This document shows, one piece after another, positions 1 through 44,171 of a stretch of DNA of 64,000 nt (position 1 is its first letter; every line of letters starts with the position of its first letter). Where the stretch lies: the NCBI RefSeq assembly GCF_021869535.1, contig NW_026262679.1, positions 19,468,001 to 19,532,000 of the forward strand, read 5' to 3'. The notes under the pieces are model-generated. The model made no database searches. It worked only from the letters and a program-made list of their open reading frames with translations, and had not been told where the DNA came from. The stretch is from Mytilus californianus. Taxonomy: Eukaryota. The position numbers were made by a program, and so were the translations under genes.

Positions 1-1099
1 TTTCGATATGTTGCAGTTACATTGATTTTTTTCAATCTATATTTAGCCTTTCTCTAATTCGAGTTCTCTGTTGATCAATTTTGAAATTTTCAGAGACTAG
101 ATACCAACTTTCTCAGGCAAAATAAATCTGAGATTGAAATGGCTAATCTTTTCACATATCTTTTAATCATAATGCTTCTAATGTATTCAAGTTGTAATAC
201 ATCCTTTGCAATCAGTCTTTTTGCCTTAAGCATTTTCTATGAAGGTAAATGCTTAATTTATAATCATTGTGAAATGGTTGTATGTGAACTGTACCCAATT
301 ATTTTCGCTGATTTTTTATTTTGAGTTTTACCTATTTCATTTAACTTCGTAGCGTTTTTGTTTTTGTTGTTGTTTTTTTGGCAACTTTCGTATTTTATTT
401 TCATTTTAGCGAAGATTGAAGTTTTGATTTTTTTTCGCGTGATTTTGTTACTGACAAACTTCTCGTAAGTAAGCTTGGTATAATAAGTCTGTTTAAAGTA
501 TTATCATTTCAAAATAAAATGTATTAAAATGGAAAACCCCTAAAACTGCATCCGAAGCATGATAAAATCACAATATCATTCATATTTTAATGCTTTACAT
601 GCTAAAATTCTTGATGATGCGAAGATCTCGTTTATACGTAATGATTTTGATATAAATTGACTAATTGATAATTATACATATGAAGACAAGCGAAAAAAAA
701 TATAACTTACAAGTTCAGTGTCAGGGCTGATATGAATAATTTGATATTCTGACTATTTAACTTGTCTATCTTGAATACGATACCTTCATTTCCATCTTCA
801 TAAGTTGAGTTTGAAATTGTGACATTTCACTAAAGTCTAACAAGCGATGTTGTTGGTGTTCATTACATATTTTATAGACAATGGAAAGACATTTGAAAGA
901 ATGAAGGGCTTCATATCCGCGAAGGGCATCCTTACAAATATATATGACATATTAGTTTGTCAGTACCGTTGTGATTTCATTCTTGCATAGAAATTGTATG
1001 TACCGTAAACTGTTATTTTAAATATTTTCTTTATTTGAAAAAAGGATGAAGATACCATGACGAAAATCTGAAACCATGAGTCGAAGAAACACAGATAAC

Positions 1100-7347: not shown

Positions 7348-8627
7348 TAGGGGCTAGGATGAAAATTTTGTCCTGCATGTTTTTTTTACAGTGGAATCTC
7401 TGTCCTGCCTTTTTATTTTTCACTCTATTCGGTCCTGCCTTTTTTTTTATTAGTTTATCCTGACTTTTTTACATGAATTGTCATCCTGCCTTTTTTTTTG
7501 CCAAGTTGTTCATCTTGCCTTTATTTTTACTCAAAACTCCTGTCCTGCTCCCCTAAAAATCAAATGGAAGCTCCCTAATGTATCCATGTATTTTTATCAG
7601 TTCATAGATCAAAAAACATAATCTCTGTTAAGAAAATGAAAATTGAAAGTGTGCCTTACTATGTGTTTTTTTTTTCTTTCATTCTTTTTTTTTTACTGTC
7701 AGGAGTTGATGGTTATATGGTTTGTTAAAATATAACTTGTTAATATTTCTGGTAGTTTTTGTCTATCATCACATAGAATATGTTGGACCTAGGTAGGGGC
7801 TAGGATGAAAATTTTTGGACCTAGGTAGGGGCTAGGATGAAAATTTTTGTCCTGCATGTTTTTTTTATAGTTGTAATCTCTGTCCTGCCTTTTTATTTTT
7901 CACTCTATTCGGTCCTGCCTTTTTTTTTATTAGTTTATCCTGACTTTTTTACATGAATTGTCATCCTGCCTTTTTTTTTTGCCAAGTTGTTCATCTTGCC
8001 TTTATTTTTACTCAAAACTCCTATCCTGCTCCCCTAAAAATCAAATGGAAGCTCCCTAATGTATCCATGTATTTTTATCAGTTCATAGATCAAAAAACAT
8101 AATCTCTGTTAAGAAAATGAAAATTGAAAGTGTGCCTTACTATGTGTTTTTTTTTTCTTTCATTCTTTTTTTTTTACTGTCAGGAGTTGATGGTTATATG
8201 GTTTGTTAAAATATAAGGGGCTAGGATGAAAATTTTTGTCCTGCATGTTTTTTTTTATAGTTGTAATCTCTGTCCTGCCTTTTTATTTTTCACTCTATTC
8301 GGTCCTGCCTTTTTTTTTATTAGTTTATCCTGACTTTTTTACATGAATTGTCATCCTGCCTTTTTTTTTTGCCAAGTTGTTCATCTTGCCTTTATTTTTA
8401 CTCAAAACTCCTGTCCTGCTCCCCTAAAAATCAAATGGAAGCTCCCTAATGTATCCATGTATTTTTATCAGTTCATAGATCAAAAAACATAATCTCTGTT
8501 AAGAAAATGAAAATTGAAAGTGTGCCTTACTATGTGTTTTTTTTTCTTTCATTCTTTTTTTTTTACTGTTAGGAGTTGATGGTTATATGGTTTGTTAAAA
8601 TATAACTTGTTAATATTTCTGGTAGTT
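7348..8627. repeat. Near-identical triplication of a ~400-bp unit (7348-7760, 7826-8215, 8217-8627)
   Basis: Each copy runs AGGGGCTAGGATGAAAATTTT...CTCCCCTAAAAATCAAATGGAAGCTCCCT...GGTTTGTTAAAATATAA. Preceded by a G21 run at 7327-7347. Confidence 0.95.
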
Positions 8628-13051: not shown

Positions 13052-13568
13052 AAGTCTAAATTGAAAACAACGTTCAAACCTATGATTGCGTTGGATAAAA
13101 ACCGCAATTTTTATACGTGTGCATGCAAAACAAATTTCTTGGTAGAGGGGTCTGAATACAGCACAAACAACATTTTCCAAAAGACCAAAACAGTGAAAAA
13201 GTATATTTAAACAAAACGCATTTGACTAACAGGTCGAACAACGGATGTTCTTAAACCCTGCTGACTGCCATTGGCGAATGCCTAATAAACGGATCACAAG
13301 ATGTAACAAAATCGATCTTTGTTATAATTTAATACCAAACAGAAAACAATAAACTTGCGAAAAAGATGGTATACCGCAAACATGAGGTGCAAAAATTTGT
13401 ACACCATATCCGGATTTCGACAATTAATGTCTCTTCAGTGATGTTAGGAATCGAAACGGTATTTGGAAGGCCATATAATTTATCTCAATTTAGGATAGAC
13501 TCTTGAATTTTGAAGAGTCGAAATAGGATGAACGGATCATATAAACCCGAAGTGAAATATAATACAAG
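13052..13568 (-). mobile_element. Hammerhead-bearing non-autonomous retroelement (retrozyme-like), family 2, copy A
   Basis: Inverted and permuted homolog of 56294-56779; contains an intact hammerhead core. Confidence 0.8.
13401..13444 (-). ncRNA. Minimal type-I hammerhead ribozyme (family 2)
   Basis: Minus strand ACAUCA-CUGAAGA-GACA(UUAAU)UGUC-GAAA-UCCGGA-UA/UGGUGU. 6-bp stem I, canonical core, 4-bp stem II, AUA cleavage triplet. Confidence 0.9.
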
Positions 13569-16924: not shown

Positions 16925-17132
16925 ACTAAGGATTTTCTACCCCAGGAAAAGATTACCTTAGCTGTATTTGGCATAACTTTAAGGAATTTTGAGTCATCAA
17001 TGCTCTTCAACCTTGTTTATTGTTTGACCTATTTAACTTTTCAGATTCGAGCGTAACTGACGAGTCTTTTGTAGACGAAACGCGCGTCTGAGGTACAAAA
17101 TTTCAATCCTGGTATATATGATGAGTTTATTT
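16925..17132 (+). mobile_element. Hammerhead-bearing repeat (family 3) inserted in the PLE 3' region
   Basis: Segment is absent from the paralogous PLE end at about 36250 and carries a hammerhead core. Confidence 0.7.
17051..17094 (+). ncRNA. Minimal type-I hammerhead ribozyme (family 3), stem I decayed
   Basis: CUGACGA-GUCU(UUUGU)AGAC-GAAA-CGCGCG-UC/. Core, stem II and GUC site are intact; stem I (GCGUAA vs UGAGGU) pairs poorly. Confidence 0.75.
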
Positions 17133-38479: not shown

Positions 38480-39341
38480 CAATAAACAATGGTATGGAAA
38501 TGGACGGTGTTAATTGGAATTACAATGAACAATGATAGGGTACTGGACGATACACTGGTAAAGTACAGGACGATGTTATCTGCAATTGCAATGAACAATG
38601 GTATGGTGATAGACGATATATGTGGAATTGCAATGAACAATAGTATGGTACTGGACAATGTTATCTGGAATTGCAATGCATAATGGTATGATATTGGACG
38701 ATGTTATCTGCAATTGCAATGAACAATGGTATGGTACTGGACGATGTTTTCTGGAATTGCTATGAACAATGGTATGGTACTGGACAATGTTATCTGGAAT
38801 TGCAATGAATAGTGGTGAAGATGTTATCTGGAATTGCAATGAACAATGATATGGTAATGGACAATGTTATCTGGAATTGCAATGAATAGTGGTATGGTAC
38901 TGGACGATGTTATCTGCAATTGCAATGAACAATGGTATGGTACTGGACGATGTTATATGGAATTACAATGAATAGTGGTATGATACTGGACGATGTTATC
39001 TGGAATTGAAATGAACAATGGTATGGTACTGGGCGATGTTATCTGGAATTGTAATGAACAGTGGTATTGTACTAGATGATGCTATTTGAAATTGAATGAA
39101 CAATGGGTTAGTACTGGACGATGTTATCTGCTACTGCAATGAACAATGGTATGGTACTGGACGATGTTATCTGGAATTGCAATGAATAGTGGTATGATAC
39201 TGGACGATGTTATCTGGAATTGCAATGAACAATGGTGTGGTACTGGACGATGTTATTTGGAAATGCAGTGAACAAGGGTATGGTACTGGACAATGTTATC
39301 TGGAATTGCAATGAACAATGGTATAGTACTGGACGATATTA
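38480..39341. repeat. 43-bp minisatellite, about 20 copies
   Basis: Unit GTTATCTGGAATTGCAATGAACAATGGTATGGTACTGGACGAT; 43-bp period seen at 38881 and 38924. Confidence 0.95.
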
Positions 39342-39831
39342 TTCACCATCACCGGTAGTTCCACGCGTTCTTTTGTTAGCCTGAAACAGATTTGTTAAGG
39401 ATGAAGGACACTTTTATGATGGCTCCTACCATGTATTAACTAACTAAACTACATTGCAAAGTCACATACCCTTTCTTCTAGGCTTCTAGAACATTTTCTA
39501 CAACTGATATTTCTGTTTTAATTTATTTTTTGTTTCTTGACTATTTAACTATAAAACTTATTTTTTAATTGCCAATAAAGCATATGTAAATAATATAATT
39601 AATTATCTTGGAGTGTAAAAACTCTTTGAATGTAATAAAGTTGTCGAACAAGTTTGGTGTTTAAAATCTCGATGAAATGAAAAGGGCGTGTAAAATAGAA
39701 TATTAAGTCGGAAAACTGATTTACTCAGTATTGCGCAACAGAAAAAGTAAGAAATCCCAAAAACGAAAAGCAATATAATTATGTTCTACCTCGCTAGGCT
39801 CGTCCAGACATAAATTATTTCTGATTCTGTA

Positions 39832-41125: not shown

Positions 41126-41355
41126 AAAAGTCGTAATCATTAACTTTTATAGTATTTTTGCTTTTGCTGGACTACACACTGTTTTGTAGTTTATCAGCGA
41201 GGTCGCGTAAATAGGGGTTTTCAAATGAACTAAGATCCTTCCTGTGAGAAAAATTAAACCTAACCTGAAAGGAAAATAATACAATAAAAAAAAGAAAATG
41301 ACTTATATTGCGCAAACTACCAAACTAAAAAAAAAACGAAATTCTTTCAAGGATC

Positions 41356-41490
41356 TCCATCACGGAGTTGACAAATCCCACCACAGGAGACATAAATAAA
41401 GTTACATCACGGGAAACTGAACAAAATCCCATCACAGGAAACACAAAGAAAGTTCCATCACGGAGTTGACAAATCCAATCACAGGAGACA
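41356..41490. repeat. Short degenerate tandem repeat (CCATCACGG/CACAGG subunits)
   Basis: TCCATCACGGAGTTGACAAATCC(C/A)A(C/T)CACAGGAGACATAA at 41356 and 41454. Confidence 0.75.
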
Positions 41491-43297
41491 TAAGGTTTCA
41501 ACTCCCTCAGGCAAAGTTGACCTTAGACGGATTTGGCTATTTGTTTTAGGTATTTTTGTCATATAGCTCTTCAACTGTTTCGGTACTTATACATCCCTCG
41601 GATTTCAAATGTTTGGCTTTGAGCGTTCCTGATGAAGGTTAATCCAGAAAAGCGCTTCGGACGCATGCAATTATTAAACGTGTTGTTTTTATTTTTTTAC
41701 ATCACTGGGTCGATACCTCTGCTGGTGGACTATCAGTCCCCGAGGGTATCATCAGCTCAGTAGTCAGTACTTCGGTACTGACATGATTTATAACAAACCT
41801 TTCTAAAATTGCCCGTTTATAAACTTTGAAATTATAAAGAAACTAAGGTTTCAACTCCCTCAGGCAAAGTTGACCTTAGATGGATTTGGCTATTTGTTTT
41901 AGGTATTTTTGTCATATAGCTCTTCAACTGTTTCGGTACTTATACATCCCTCGGATTTCAAATGTTTGGCTTTGAGCGTTCCTGATGAAGGTAAATCCAG
42001 AAAAGCGCTTCGGACGCATGCAATTATTAAACGTGTTGTTTTTAATTTTTTACATCACTGGGTCGATACCTCTGCTGGTGGACTATCAGTCCCCGAGGGT
42101 ATCATCAGCTCAGTAGTCAGTACTTCGGTACTGACATGATTTATAACAAACCTTTCTAAAATTGCCCGTTTATAAATTTTGAAATTATAAGGAAACTAAG
42201 GTTTCAACTCCCTCAGGCAAAGTTGACCTTAGATGGATTTGGCTATTTGTTTTAGGTATTTTTGTCATATAGCTCTTCAACTGTTTCGGTACTTATACAT
42301 CCCTCGGATTTCAAATGTTTGGCTTTGAGCGTTCCTGATGAAGGTAAATCCAGAAAAGCGCTTCGGACGCATGCAATTATTAAACGTGTTGTTTTTAATT
42401 TTTTACATCACTGGGTCGATACCTCTGCTGGTGGACTATCAGTCCCCGAGGGTATCATCAGCTCAGTAGTCAGTACTTCGGTACTGACATGTTTTATATC
42501 AAACCTTTCTAAAATTGCCCGTTTATAAATTTTGAAAATATAAAGAAACTAAGGTTTCAACTCCCTCAGGCAAAGTTGACCTTAGATGGATTTGGCTATT
42601 TGTTTTGGGTATTTTTGTCATATAGCTCTTCAACTGTTTCGGTACTTATACATCCCTCGGATTTCAAATGTTTGGCTTTGAGCGTTCCTGATGAAGGTAA
42701 ATCCAGAAAAGCGCTTCGGACGCATGCAATTATTAAACGTGTTGTTTTTAATTTTTTACATCACTGGGTCGATACCTCTGCTGGTGGACTATCAGTCCCC
42801 GAGGGTATCATCAGCTCAGTAGTCAGTACTTCGGTACTGACATGATTTATAACAAACCTTTCTAAAATTGCCCGTTTATAAATTTTGAAATTATAAAGAA
42901 ACTAAGGTTTCAACTCCCTCAGGCAAAGTTGACCTTAGATGGATTTGGTTATTTGTTTTAGGTATTTTTGTCATATAGCTCTTCAACTGTTTCGGTACTT
43001 ATACATCCCTCGGATTTCAAATGTTTGGCTTTGAGCGTTCCTGATGAAGGTAAATCCAGAAAAGCGCTTCGGACGCATGCAATTATTAAACGTGTTGTTT
43101 TTAATTTTTTACATCACTGGGTCGATACCTCTGCTGGTGTACTATCAGTCCCCGAGGGTATCATCAGCTCAGTAGTCAGTACTTCGGTACTGACATGATT
43201 TATAACAAACCTTTCTAAAATTGCCCGTTTATAAATTTTGAAATTATAATCGCTTCGGACGCATGCAATTATTAAACGTGTTGTTTTTAATTTTTTA
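41491..43297 (+). mobile_element. Retrozyme-like tandem array: five 353-bp units (last ends about 43249) plus a 47-bp terminal fragment, one hammerhead per unit
   Basis: Unit starts TAAGGTTTCAACTCCC at 41491, 41844, 42197, 42550, 42903; only a few substitutions between units. Confidence 0.92.
41623..41664 (+). ncRNA. Minimal type-I hammerhead ribozyme (family 1); further copies at 41976-42017, 42329-42370, 42682-42723, 43035-43076
   Basis: GCGUUC-CUGAUGA-AGG(UAAAU or UUAAU)CCA-GAAA-AGCGCU-UC/GGACGC. 6-bp stem I with one GU pair, canonical core, very short stem II, UUC site. Confidence 0.82.
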
Positions 43298-43304
43298 TCT
43301 AAAC

Positions 43305-44171
43305 TAGGCATAAAAGAAATGATTTACCCCGTTATTCATGCTTATTGTCTTGCTGACAGGATTAGAGGAGAGTTTATCGATGTTATTTTTGAAACGAATA
43401 ATTTTTATCTAATGGAAGATCCAAAGTTGAATTACGCAAGTCCCATGCAAATCAAACCCAAGTTAATTTTTGAGTAGGCTTCAAAACACTCTTCCCTTGA
43501 TTAAAGAAAAATCCTGCGGATTTAAGATGTAACTGCAAGATATTAAATAATATTGTGAGTTACACTCTACTCCCCAACCATCAATATATCATCAAGATAC
43601 GATATAAATCTAAGGCACTGAAAACGCCAAGGATTGACAACAGGACGTAAAACTATTGAAAACACATGTGCTGCTGTAGATGTCTCCCAAATGTGAGAGC
43701 GGAAAATTTAAAGTATTTAGTTGTGTTCTGAAATTTCCAAGAAAACCCTGAATATGTCTGATGATCTTAATGCATGCTTACATGATGATAACCGCTTGTT
43801 AAATCAAATCTAACCATACATCTGTCTTTAATTGTGTTTTGTTAAGTCTCCAATACGCTTTCAAACTTTAATAATTTTCTTTTTCCTATAAATTGATTGA
43901 AGTGCCTTATATCTAGTATCAACCTTTCTTTAACTGAGACGTTAGCTGATACGGTGAGTGGTTTGATAACAAAAGGAATGTGATCTTTACTTTCAATAGC
44001 TGCCCCTGTTTGTAAAAGCTTATTAATGGCACGCAACATGAAAACTGAATGTTTAAAAACAGACATATTATTGTTCAATCTAGCTGATGAAGGATGTTCA
44101 AAAAAAGGTATTAAATAACCGCTAGAAATTAAGTTGAGAACAAAATTGAATGAAAATTTCCAACAAAACAT
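43305..44171 (-). pseudogene. Reverse transcriptase of the DIRS element
   Basis: ISSGYLIPF..PFVIKPLTVS..KERLILDIRHFN..KFE, FDLTSGYHHV, GFSW..YFKF..LTFG, ISYLDD (YxDD), KSVLKPTQ. Confidence 0.9.

What the first reader, a model, noticed from the sequence alone, without database searches (positions are those of the whole stretch)
41491..43297. Young 5 x 353-bp retrozyme-like array with one hammerhead ribozyme per monomer
Seen: an exact 353-bp period, few substitutions, and in each unit GCGUUC-CUGAUGA-AGGUAAAUCCA-GAAA-AGCGCU-UC/GGACGC. Known: 150-400 nt tandem repeats with minimal type-I hammerheads (retrozymes) give monomeric and circular RNAs in metazoans, including Mytilus, and are thought to be mobilised by Penelope-like elements. 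Inference: a recent rolling-circle-type integration, potentially a source of 353-nt circRNA. Stem II is atypical (A/A next to the core, only 2 firm GC pairs).
Basis: partly seen in the sequence, partly recalled or inferred. Interest (0 to 1): 0.8.

Follow-up and report, generated by a model that had tools for sequence, protein, structure and literature searches.

The report
Mussel retrozyme array, odd hammerhead
This is a young five-unit copy of a non-coding mussel jumping element (a retrozyme) whose 353-base repeats each carry a hammerhead self-cutting RNA motif with an unusual stem II; the class is already known in Mytilus, but this roughly 2,500-copy ribozyme variant and its fixed insertion end appear not to have been described.

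Summary
Window 41491-43249 holds 5.0 units of 353 bp at 98% identity, followed by a 48-nt tail to 43297. Every unit carries the stated hammerhead-like motif.

It belongs to a known class. Non-LTR retrozymes of Mytilus, with 350-390 bp repeats and abundant circRNA, were published in 2020. This unit is about 69% identical to genomic units that carry the published ribozyme.

What seems new:
- **Ribozyme variant.** The hammerhead has an A.A at 10.1/11.1 and only two G-C pairs in stem II. It occurs 2,506 times exactly in this genome but gets no Rfam hit, whereas the published form (4,061 copies) does. The catalytic core is identical. Four stem pairs changed on both sides and still pair.
- **Insertion ends.** In 60 dispersed copies the 3' end is fixed (50/60 at unit position 204-215, 41 nt past the cleavage site). 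The 5' ends fall at 55 different positions, and lengths run from 85 to 1,008 bp. The window array ends at the same point.

This pattern fits target-primed reverse transcription from an endless (circular or multimeric) RNA.

Sense-strand RNA of the family exists. Cleavage and circularity remain untested. The scan has noted many other retrozyme arrays in this genome (mostly a 538-bp family), but none of this family.

Verdict: real, a new member of a known kind.

The parts
41491..43249 (+). Tandem array of five 353-bp retrozyme units. Units start at 41491, 41844, 42197, 42550 and 42903; the fifth stops at unit position 347.
   Evidence: TRF: period 353, 5.0 copies, 98%. Eleven private substitutions and no shared ones.
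43250..43297 (+). Terminal 48-nt tail: one odd T plus unit positions 163-209. It is the remnant of a sixth unit with an internal deletion of unit positions 348 to 162. It keeps only the cleavage-site remnant CGCTTC|GG (43251-43258), without a catalytic core. It ends at the family's canonical 3' terminus.
   Evidence: 47/47 identical to unit positions 163-209. The family's 3' ends cluster at positions 204-215.
41623..41664 (+). Hammerhead-like motif of unit 1 (stem II loop variant TTAAT). Predicted cut after C41658.
   Evidence: Sequence.
41976..42017 (+). Hammerhead-like motif of unit 2, used as reference. Helix I is GCGUUC/GGACGC. The core is CUGAUGA..GAA. Helix II is A.A plus two G-C pairs with loop UAAAU. 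Helix III is AA/UU with palindromic loop GCGC. C17 = 42011.
   Evidence: No Rfam hit.
42329..42370 (+). Hammerhead-like motif of unit 3. Predicted cut after C42364.
42682..42723 (+). Hammerhead-like motif of unit 4. Predicted cut after C42717.
43035..43076 (+). Hammerhead-like motif of unit 5. Predicted cut after C43070.
42039..42052 (+). T-rich tract (T5 AA T6 A) ending at unit position 209. This is where nearly all family insertions end, and it is the inferred start site of cDNA synthesis. It recurs in every unit.
   Evidence: 50 of 60 dispersed copies, and all 13 arrays whose 3' boundary lies inside the locus, end here.
42053..42148 (+). Conserved structured domain directly 3' of that terminus (unit 2 copy). 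It includes the 8-bp UUCG hairpin at 42116-42135. After the ribozyme it is the block best conserved with the canonical retrozyme family.
   Evidence: 81-86% identity to canonical units, against about 69% overall. RNAalifold finds 24 pairs, 5 of them with changes on both sides that keep pairing.

Best explanation
The array is one recent insertion of a non-autonomous, non-coding retroelement of the metazoan non-LTR retrozyme class, in a Mytilus-type mussel genome. The proposed life cycle has five steps, each marked shown or inferred. (1) Source copies are transcribed on the + strand; sense-strand RNA of the family is shown. (2) The type I hammerhead in each unit cuts after C17, most likely as a two-ribozyme dimer formed through the 8-nt palindrome AAGCGCUU of helix III. 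This is inferred from the intact core and compensated stems. (3) The 353-nt monomers are ligated into circles by a host ligase; this is inferred from the published sister family. (4) A reverse transcriptase supplied in trans starts cDNA at a fixed site, the U-rich tract 41 nt 3' of the cleavage site and just upstream of a conserved folded domain. A Penelope-like element is the likeliest source. The enzyme runs round the endless template for a variable distance. The fixed 3' end, scattered 5' ends and lengths from 0.25 to about 3 units in the dispersed sample are shown; the circular template and the enzyme are inferred. (5) Here it made 5.6 rounds. A later or concomitant 168-nt deletion or template jump removed the sixth ribozyme core.
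For: The repeat and motif are confirmed. The family is dispersed: 1,867 candidate places and 231 scored matches at 94-100% identity on many contigs, with 2,506 exact variant ribozymes. It is homologous to the published mussel retrozyme. The published HHR sequence occurs 4,061 times in this genome, and units carrying it align to this unit at 69% over 302 nt. The published Mg353 construct shows the same conserved blocks. Compared with the canonical, experimentally self-cleaving ribozyme, the variant has an identical core. Four pairs changed on both sides and still pair (2.1/1.1, 10.2/11.2, 10.3/11.3, 15.2/16.2). The helix III palindrome is kept. Of 60 dispersed copies, 50 end at unit position 204-215 (binomial p about 2e-63). 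Their 5' ends fall at 55 different positions, 22 of 60 are longer than one unit, and all 13 arrays whose 3' boundary lies inside the locus end at the same place. The window array ends at position 209. The canonical family shows the same anchoring, 6 of 6. All 11 substitutions in the array are private, which fits a single origin. RNA reads cover the repeat and give zero depth on both unique flanks. In two libraries the first mates lie mostly on the - strand, which indicates + strand RNA. The ribozyme bin is the deepest and shows no variant calls inside the motif. Intact PLE ORFs of 755-911 aa exist in the genome. Published work shows mussel retrozyme circRNAs at high level and self-cleavage of the sister ribozyme (PMC7229834).
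Against: No Rfam hammerhead model scores the motif, even at E<=10 on 65 nt. Stem II has only two Watson-Crick pairs behind an A.A, where G10.1-C11.1 is otherwise nearly universal (PMC4209133). The nearest-neighbour energy of the hammerhead fold is only -2.0 kcal/mol, and other folds are more stable. No read pile-ups mark the predicted cleavage site. Most RNA reads are only 90-95% alike, so they come from sister subfamilies; transcription of this locus and circularity are not shown. The circular fold of the unit is not clearly more stable than shuffles (z = -1.3). Target-site duplications are weak: mean junction match 5.22 against 4.81 in permuted pairs. Inverted neighbour copies, typical of PLEs, are rare at 2 of 60. 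No PLE sharing the 3' region was identified.
Confidence: 0.8

Rival explanations
1. The hammerhead variant is catalytically dead or nearly so. The family spreads as a SINE-like retroposon from uncleaved linear or multimeric transcripts. Arrays arise when the reverse transcriptase jumps from the 5' end of one RNA to the 3' end of another, with no circular RNA involved.
For: There is no Rfam hit and stem II is weak. The 3' end lies 41 nt beyond the cleavage site, not at it. No reads end at the cleavage site. PLE partial tandems are classically explained by template jumps (PMC8557442). In the large array on contig C154, units with core-killing changes were still amplified.
Against: The core is invariant and four stem pairs are compensated relative to the active sister ribozyme. 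The 2,506 exact copies span an old and a young subfamily. All five cores in this young array are intact. The axolotl HHR_Amex2, with a U.U at the base of helix II, still cleaves (22% in one hour; PMC7229834). A linear template would need a defined 5' end, yet the 5' ends show no pile-up at any position.
Confidence: 0.25
2. Only one unit or a partial unit was inserted. The five copies arose later at the DNA level by unequal crossing-over or replication slippage, as in ordinary satellite growth.
For: The same family forms an array of at least 40 kb on contig C154, in which mutated units are shared by several copies. That shows DNA-level amplification does occur.
Against: In the window array all 11 substitutions are private to single units and none is shared by neighbours. 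In the dispersed sample, insertion lengths run on past one unit: 22 of 60 exceed 353 bp and 4 of 60 exceed 706 bp. The array keeps the canonical 3' terminus.
Confidence: 0.12
3. Each unit is an RNA polymerase III transcription unit, SINE-like. The T5AAT6 tract is its terminator, and that alone explains the fixed 3' end. The B-box-like GGGTCGATACC just downstream would be an internal promoter.
For: A T-run lies exactly at the 3' terminus. A 10-of-11 match to the B-box consensus lies in the conserved domain; this was read from the sequence and the consensus is from general knowledge.
Against: ARAGORN finds no tRNA-like gene. The A-box-like word lies downstream of the B-box-like word, which is the wrong order. 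Multi-unit insertions (22 of 60) would need read-through of two T-runs per unit. The canonical family is anchored at the equivalent position without a comparable T-run.
Confidence: 0.08
4. The array is a satellite-like repeat carried inside a Helentron or MITE-type DNA transposon, as is common in bivalves, or it is an assembly artefact.
For: Bivalve genomes hold many such dispersed arrays (PMC7492417, listed).
Against: The flanks of 13 arrays and 60 dispersed copies share nothing with one another, and no conserved termini were found. The 1.8-kb array sits in a 175-contig, 1.65-Gb assembly, and near-identical units occur at about 20 other loci.
Confidence: 0.03

Closest known systems
Mytilus galloprovincialis non-LTR retrozymes (Mg353; HHR A and HHR B), Cervera & de la Pena 2020, PMC7229834
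   Same: Same host group, and the cloned example has the same 353-bp unit length. Both are AT-rich, non-coding tandem units with one type I hammerhead per unit at the same place in the unit. Overall identity is about 69%, with the same conserved domain. The catalytic core, the GCGC helix III loop and the 3'-anchored insertion pattern are identical.
   Different: Helix II is A.A plus two G-C pairs with a 5-nt loop, in place of GUC/GAC with a 7-nt loop. Pair 15.2/16.2 is A-U instead of C-G. Helix I differs at four positions. The motif is not found by Rfam Hammerhead_1. It is not one of the two ribozyme families counted in that paper (2,880 and 1,681 motifs).
Axolotl retrozyme Rtz_353 with HHR_Amex2, and newt satellite 2
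   Same: A tandem unit of about 330-350 bp. A type I hammerhead with a short helix III capped by a palindromic tetraloop, which favours dimeric cleavage. HHR_Amex2 has a mismatch (U.U) at the base of helix II and still cleaves slowly.
   Different: No sequence homology. The mismatch here is A.A, and only two pairs follow it. Copy numbers differ by about 50-fold.
Minimal hammerheads in the pseudo-LTRs of Penelope-like elements (PMC4209133; PMC8557442)
   Same: The ribozyme lies near the 3' end of the inserted unit. There is strong 5' truncation and partial tandem copies. An extra unpaired nucleotide follows A9. Helix III is palindromic, and action as a dimer is presumed.
   Different: PLE hammerheads keep G10.1-C11.1 and have a long helix II of 6-8 bp. 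PLEs encode RT and GIY-YIG endonuclease, whereas this element encodes nothing. Inverted 5' copies are rare here (2 of 60), and no sequence link to a PLE was established.
Schistosoma Sm-alpha and cave-cricket pDo500 hammerhead repeats
   Same: Dispersed or tandem non-coding repeats of a few hundred bp that carry a type I hammerhead (general knowledge; pDo500 in PMC2837043, listed).
   Different: Unrelated sequences with canonical stem II. They were not examined here.

Membership tests
Hammerhead ribozyme, type I (Rfam RF00163) | Conserved catalytic core: C3-U4-G5-A6-N7-G8-A9, G12-A13-A14, A15.1-U16.1, H17 | tested here: met
   All core positions are present in all five units, identical to the experimentally active mussel ribozyme.
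Hammerhead ribozyme, type I (Rfam RF00163) | Helices I and III can form, with helix I open-ended | tested here: met
   Helix I has 6 pairs (GCGUUC/GGACGC). Helix III has 2 pairs plus loop GCGC, and the 8-nt palindrome allows an intermolecular 8-bp helix in the dimer fold.
Hammerhead ribozyme, type I (Rfam RF00163) | Helix II closed by G10.1-C11.1 with at least 3-4 pairs | tested here: not met
   There is an A.A at 10.1/11.1, followed by only two G-C pairs and a 5-nt loop. No G..C version appeared among the first 100 loose-pattern hits.
Hammerhead ribozyme, type I (Rfam RF00163) | Covariance-model score at or above the gathering threshold (34 bits) | tested here: not met
   No hammerhead hit at the gathering threshold, at E<=10 on 2.1 kb, or at E<=10 on 65 nt. 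The canonical mussel ribozyme, used as control, scores 28-36 bits.
Hammerhead ribozyme, type I (Rfam RF00163) | Site-specific self-cleavage after H17 | not testable with these tools
   This needs in vitro transcription. The RNA reads show no ends at the site, which is expected for circles or for uncut RNA alike.
Metazoan non-LTR retrozyme | Tandem units of 150-450 bp, each with a type I hammerhead, with low GC and no LTR, PBS, PPT or ORF | tested here: met
   Units are 353 bp and GC is 37.9%. No ORF of 130 aa or more overlaps the array. The flanks are unrelated between loci. The caveat is the non-canonical stem II.
Metazoan non-LTR retrozyme | Dispersed multicopy family in the genome, from monomers to multimers | tested here: met
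   There are 2,506 exact ribozymes. Copies range from 85 bp to arrays of at least 40 kb, on many contigs.
Metazoan non-LTR retrozyme | Sequence homology to a described retrozyme of the same host | tested here: met
   69% identity over 302 nt to units that carry the published ribozyme, and 81-86% in the conserved domain.
Metazoan non-LTR retrozyme | Expressed as monomeric linear and circular RNA | tested here: inconclusive
   Family RNA is present with a sense-strand bias and zero depth on the flanks. Most reads come from sister subfamilies, and circularity cannot be read from these data.
Non-autonomous partner of Penelope-like elements | Fixed 3' end with heavy 5' truncation and partial tandems | tested here: met
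   50 of 60 3' ends fall at positions 204-215. The 5' ends fall at 55 positions, and 22 of 60 copies exceed one unit.
Non-autonomous partner of Penelope-like elements | Adjacent inverted 5'-truncated copy, or 30-40-bp extra tails at the insertion ends | tested here: not met
   Inverted neighbours occur in 2 of 60 copies. Short element-derived pieces were found in the flanks of only 3 of 60.
Non-autonomous partner of Penelope-like elements | Sequence similarity of the 3' region to the pseudo-LTR of a co-resident autonomous PLE | not tested
   Intact PLE ORFs exist, with 1,480 GIY-YIG candidates and frames of 755-911 aa.

The most novel reading that the evidence does not exclude
Mussel retrozymes, both the published canonical family and this variant family, are copied from a circular RNA by a telomerase-like (Penelope-type) reverse transcriptase. 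The enzyme starts at one defined internal site: a U-rich tract about 40-50 nt 3' of the ribozyme ligation site, directly upstream of a conserved, covarying folded domain that would serve as its recognition element. On this reading the ribozyme with an A.A at the base of stem II is a third, still active hammerhead class that standard descriptors miss.
Probability: 0.3. Interest if true: 0.65.

Novelty: new member of a known kind. Interest (0 to 1): 0.42.

Why it matters
Animal retrozymes are among the most abundant sources of small circular RNA in some invertebrates. How they are copied back into DNA is still open: the 2020 review states that no conserved motif points to the enzyme or to the priming step. 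This family offers two testable handles. The first is a fixed cDNA start site next to a conserved folded domain, shared by two diverged mussel families. The second is a natural hammerhead with a mismatch where G10.1-C11.1 is almost universal, amplified to about 2,500 copies. If that ribozyme cleaves, it widens the sequence space that search descriptors such as Rfam and RNAmotif should allow. It would also mean that ribozyme counts in bivalve genomes are underestimates. For annotation, the result says that roughly a quarter of the 10,775 hammerhead-like motifs in this genome (loose pattern) are invisible to Rfam.

Tried and rejected
- **Rfam.** Searches at the gathering threshold and at E<=10, on 64 kb, 2.1 kb and 65 nt, gave no hammerhead hit for the variant. 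The control on canonical units was positive.
- **tRNA-like reading of the conserved domain.** ARAGORN found nothing.
- **Target-site duplications.** There is only a small excess of short, mostly T-rich junction matches: 5.22 against 4.81 nt, with 7 of 50 at 7 nt or more. No consistent duplication was found.
- **PLE-type scars.** Inverted neighbours occur in 2 of 60 copies, and extra short tails in 3 of 60.
- **Stability of the circle.** The circular fold is -79.3 kcal/mol, z = -1.3 against mononucleotide shuffles, so it is not distinctive.
- **Covariation within the variant family.** Helix I shows only scattered single decays, several at CpG, so covariation is informative only between families.
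- **Unbiased sampling of ribozyme state.** The replacement anchor turned out to be specific to a 32-unit sub-subfamily, whose ribozymes carry about 1.4% substitutions, like neutral copies.
- **Search for the autonomous partner.** I did not try another route. Listed PLE coordinates on contig C1 do not coincide with listed ribozyme hits.
- **RNA ends.** There are no pile-ups at the cleavage site or at position 209. The listed begin and end places fall where similarity to sister subfamilies breaks.
- **Literature.** No held paper describes this variant or a Mytilus satellite of this sequence.
Full report
**1. Observation**

Tandem Repeats Finder reports one array at 41491-43249 with period 353, 5.0 copies, 98% matches and no indels. 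Read directly, the units begin at 41491, 41844, 42197, 42550 and 42903. They differ from their majority consensus at 11 positions, each private to a single unit.

The fifth unit stops at unit position 347. It is followed by one T and then 47 nt that are identical to unit positions 163-209 (43250-43297). The locus is therefore 5 units plus a sixth that has lost about 168 nt, including its ribozyme core.

Unit 1 has one change, in the stem II loop. GC content is 37.9%. No ORF of 130 aa or more overlaps the array.

**2. The element in this genome**

The window lies in a 1.65-Gb, 175-contig assembly. The unit matches 1,867 candidate places. 231 scored matches at 94-100% identity lie on many contigs, including an array of at least 40 kb on contig C154.

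The exact variant ribozyme pattern occurs 2,506 times, against 0 for the reversed control. The ribozyme published for Mytilus galloprovincialis retrozymes occurs 4,061 times. A loose pattern covering both gives 10,775 hits. Its first 100 listed hits fall into two discrete classes, with no intermediate that has a G-C at the base of the variant stem II.

Together with the genome size, this places the window in a Mytilus-type mussel. Earlier notes of this scan say the same.

**3. Relation to what is published**

Cervera and de la Pena (2020, PMC7229834) described mussel retrozymes as follows:
- about 5,000 type I hammerheads in two ribozyme families (2,880 and 1,681 motifs);
- repeats of 350-390 bp;
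- slow self-cleavage in vitro (kobs about 0.1 per min);
- abundant circular RNA in gonad and mantle.

Genomic units carrying that ribozyme align to the window's unit at 69% identity over 302 nt, and at 81-86% in one block. The cloned Mg353 construct shows the same conserved blocks by eye. The window's element is therefore a diverged sister family of a described element.

None of the held papers mentions this ribozyme variant.

**4. Is the motif a hammerhead?**

Rfam says no. There is no hit at the gathering threshold on the whole window, none at E<=10 on 2.1 kb, and none at E<=10 on 65 nt. The same search scores the canonical mussel ribozyme at 28-36 bits, around the threshold of 34.

A direct comparison with the active sister ribozyme gives a different picture:

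| Element | Variant (this array) | Canonical (published) |
|---|---|---|
| Core (CUGAUGA, GAA, A15.1-U16.1, C17, loop GCGC) | identical | identical |
| Helix I | 6 pairs; 2.1/1.1 is C-G | 6 pairs; 2.1/1.1 is A-U |
| Helix III, pair 15.2/16.2 | A-U | C-G |
| 8-nt helix III palindrome | kept | kept |
| Helix II, pairs 10.2/11.2 and 10.3/11.3 | G-C, G-C | U-A, C-G |
| Helix II, pair 10.1/11.1 | A.A (unpaired) | G-C |

In total, four pairs changed on both sides and still pair, one pair is lost, and the unpaired core did not change. This is the signature of a constrained ribozyme, not of a decayed one.

Three points weaken the case. Stem II is left with two Watson-Crick pairs. The nearest-neighbour energy of the hammerhead fold is -2.0 kcal/mol, against -3.4 for the canonical form. 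Other folds are more stable in both.

Two precedents soften the objection. The axolotl HHR_Amex2 has a U.U at the base of helix II and still cleaves 22% in an hour. Penelope-type hammerheads carry an extra unpaired nucleotide after A9, though they keep G10.1-C11.1.

The two-strand fold of the variant forms the 8-bp intermolecular helix III expected of a double hammerhead.

I put the chance that the variant still cleaves at about 55-60%.

**5. How copies are inserted**

I took the first 60 separate places on contig C1 that hold the exact variant ribozyme. I aligned each to a five-unit reference.

- **3' ends:** 50 of 60 end at unit positions 204-215, with the mode at 208/209 (binomial p about 2e-63 for a 12-position window).
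- **5' ends:** they fall at 55 different positions.
- **Lengths:** 85 to 1,008 bp, median 258. 22 of 60 exceed one unit and 4 of 60 exceed two units.

All 13 arrays whose 3' boundary lies inside the locus, taken from the whole-unit search, end at the same place. So does the window array, at position 209. Six canonical copies show the same rule: they end 37-54 nt after their cleavage site, with scattered 5' ends.

The flanks are unrelated between loci. That excludes a carrier transposon.

A fixed 3' end with random 5' truncation is the mark of target-primed reverse transcription. Insertions run on smoothly past one unit, so the template has no 5' end within a unit. It is either circular or multimeric.

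The terminus is not the ribozyme site. It lies 41 nt further on, in a T-rich tract. It sits directly upstream of the block best conserved between the two families. That block folds into hairpins with compensatory changes: 24 predicted pairs, 5 with changes on both sides, including an 8-bp UUCG hairpin. An internal start site beside a recognition fold would suit a telomerase-like enzyme. That step is inference.

Other junction features:
- Target-site duplications are weak. The mean junction match is 5.22 nt against 4.81 +/- 0.14 in permuted pairs (0 of 300 permutations reach it), and 7 of 50 copies have 7 nt or more, mostly T-rich microhomology.
- Inverted neighbour copies (2 of 60) and extra short tails (3 of 60) are uncommon.
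- Intact Penelope-like ORFs of 755-911 aa, some in tandem, exist in the genome.

**6. Age and origin of this array**

The array has 11 private substitutions and no shared ones in 1,759 nt. This fits five units copied at once from one template and diverging since, at 0.6% per unit.

The window's sub-subfamily is marked by one tail variant. It has only 32 units, spread over 14 contigs (about 27 separate places), nearly all 98-100% alike in the ribozyme region. The lineage was therefore active recently.

The contrast is the C154 array. There only about 40% of units keep the exact ribozyme, and core-killing changes are shared by up to seven units each. That array grew at the DNA level.

The 168-nt gap in the last unit has a one-base filler at the junction. 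It could be a template jump or a later deletion; I cannot tell which.

**7. RNA**

Three raw RNA-seq runs and one contig set were laid on 41300-43450.
- Both unique flanks have zero depth, and the repeat is covered.
- Depth is highest over the ribozyme.
- No variant calls fall inside the motif, apart from the unit 1 loop base.
- In two libraries the first mates lie mainly on the - strand (for example 73.5 against 4.9). In the usual stranded protocols this means RNA of the + strand, the ribozyme-sense strand.

Most reads are only 90-95% alike and run on into unlike sequence, so they come from sister subfamilies. Twelve reads in one run are 99% or more alike.

There are no pile-ups of ends at the cleavage site or at position 209. 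The family, including members with this ribozyme, is therefore transcribed. Cleavage and circles are not shown.

**8. Rivals**

- **Dead ribozyme with linear templates and template jumps (0.25).** This remains possible.
- **DNA-level duplication after a short insertion (0.12).** It is disfavoured by the private-only substitutions.
- **Pol III unit with the T-run as terminator (0.08).** It is disfavoured by the multi-unit insertions, by the canonical family's T-poor terminus, and by the ARAGORN blank.
- **Carrier transposon or assembly artefact (0.03).** It is not supported.

**9. Verdict**

The element is a new family member of a known class in a host where that class is already documented. 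This scan has already met many retrozyme arrays in this genome, mostly a 538-bp family. A look-up by sequence found none of this family, though the operators note that a blank there means little.

Two details appear new. One is a roughly 2,500-copy hammerhead variant that Rfam cannot see. The other is a fixed cDNA start site shared by two mussel retrozyme families.

Noticed in passing
window 17051-17094 (+): A solitary canonical-type mussel hammerhead with N7 = C (CTGACGA...GTC..GAC..GAAACGCGCGTC). It was found by a loose pattern and belongs to the published ribozyme class, not to the variant.
   Followed up: no
window 35-250 (+): A diverged retrozyme fragment, 66-68% identical to unit positions 296 to 153 of the 353-bp unit. 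It is probably an old copy of a sister family.
   Followed up: no
window 41358-41493: A 51-bp / 26-bp minisatellite (CATCACGGA...ACAGGAGACATAA) directly abuts the 5' junction of the array. It is absent from the flanks of all other copies examined, so it is target DNA and not part of the element.
   Followed up: partly
G000:C154:69996709-70037797 (loci L009, L010, L013-L020): An array of at least 40 kb of the same family, with 352-bp units and some 361-bp units. Only about 40% of units keep the exact ribozyme. Core-killing changes (A6 to G, G12 to T) are each shared by about seven units, which shows satellite-like growth at the DNA level that does not depend on ribozyme function.
   Followed up: partly
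L031-L036 (G000:C1, canonical retrozyme copies): The published canonical mussel retrozyme family shows the same architecture. Six of six copies end 37-54 nt after the cleavage site, just before the conserved CCACTGGGTCGAT block, with 5' ends at six different positions.
   Followed up: partly
G000:C110:55838761-55861102: Seven GIY-YIG matches, six of them spaced 3,927 bp apart on the minus strand, each in a 755-aa open frame. This is a tandem array of an apparently intact Penelope-like element. Identical-scoring 755-aa frames lie on several other contigs.
   Followed up: no
window 42053-42148 and the equivalent block in L031, L032, L046: The domain after the insertion terminus contains a 10-of-11 match to the Pol III B-box consensus (GGGTCGATACC). 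It also holds two hairpins that covary between families. ARAGORN sees no tRNA-like gene.
   Followed up: partly
window 7827-8605 and 38552-39342: Two other tandem repeats: a 390-bp unit x 2.0 at 98%, and a 43/129-bp minisatellite. Neither holds a hammerhead core by the patterns used.
   Followed up: no
window 13052-13568: Another first-stage note on this window speaks of circularly permuted copies 43 kb apart with a conserved ribozyme. My pattern scans found no variant or canonical mussel hammerhead at that place.
   Followed up: no
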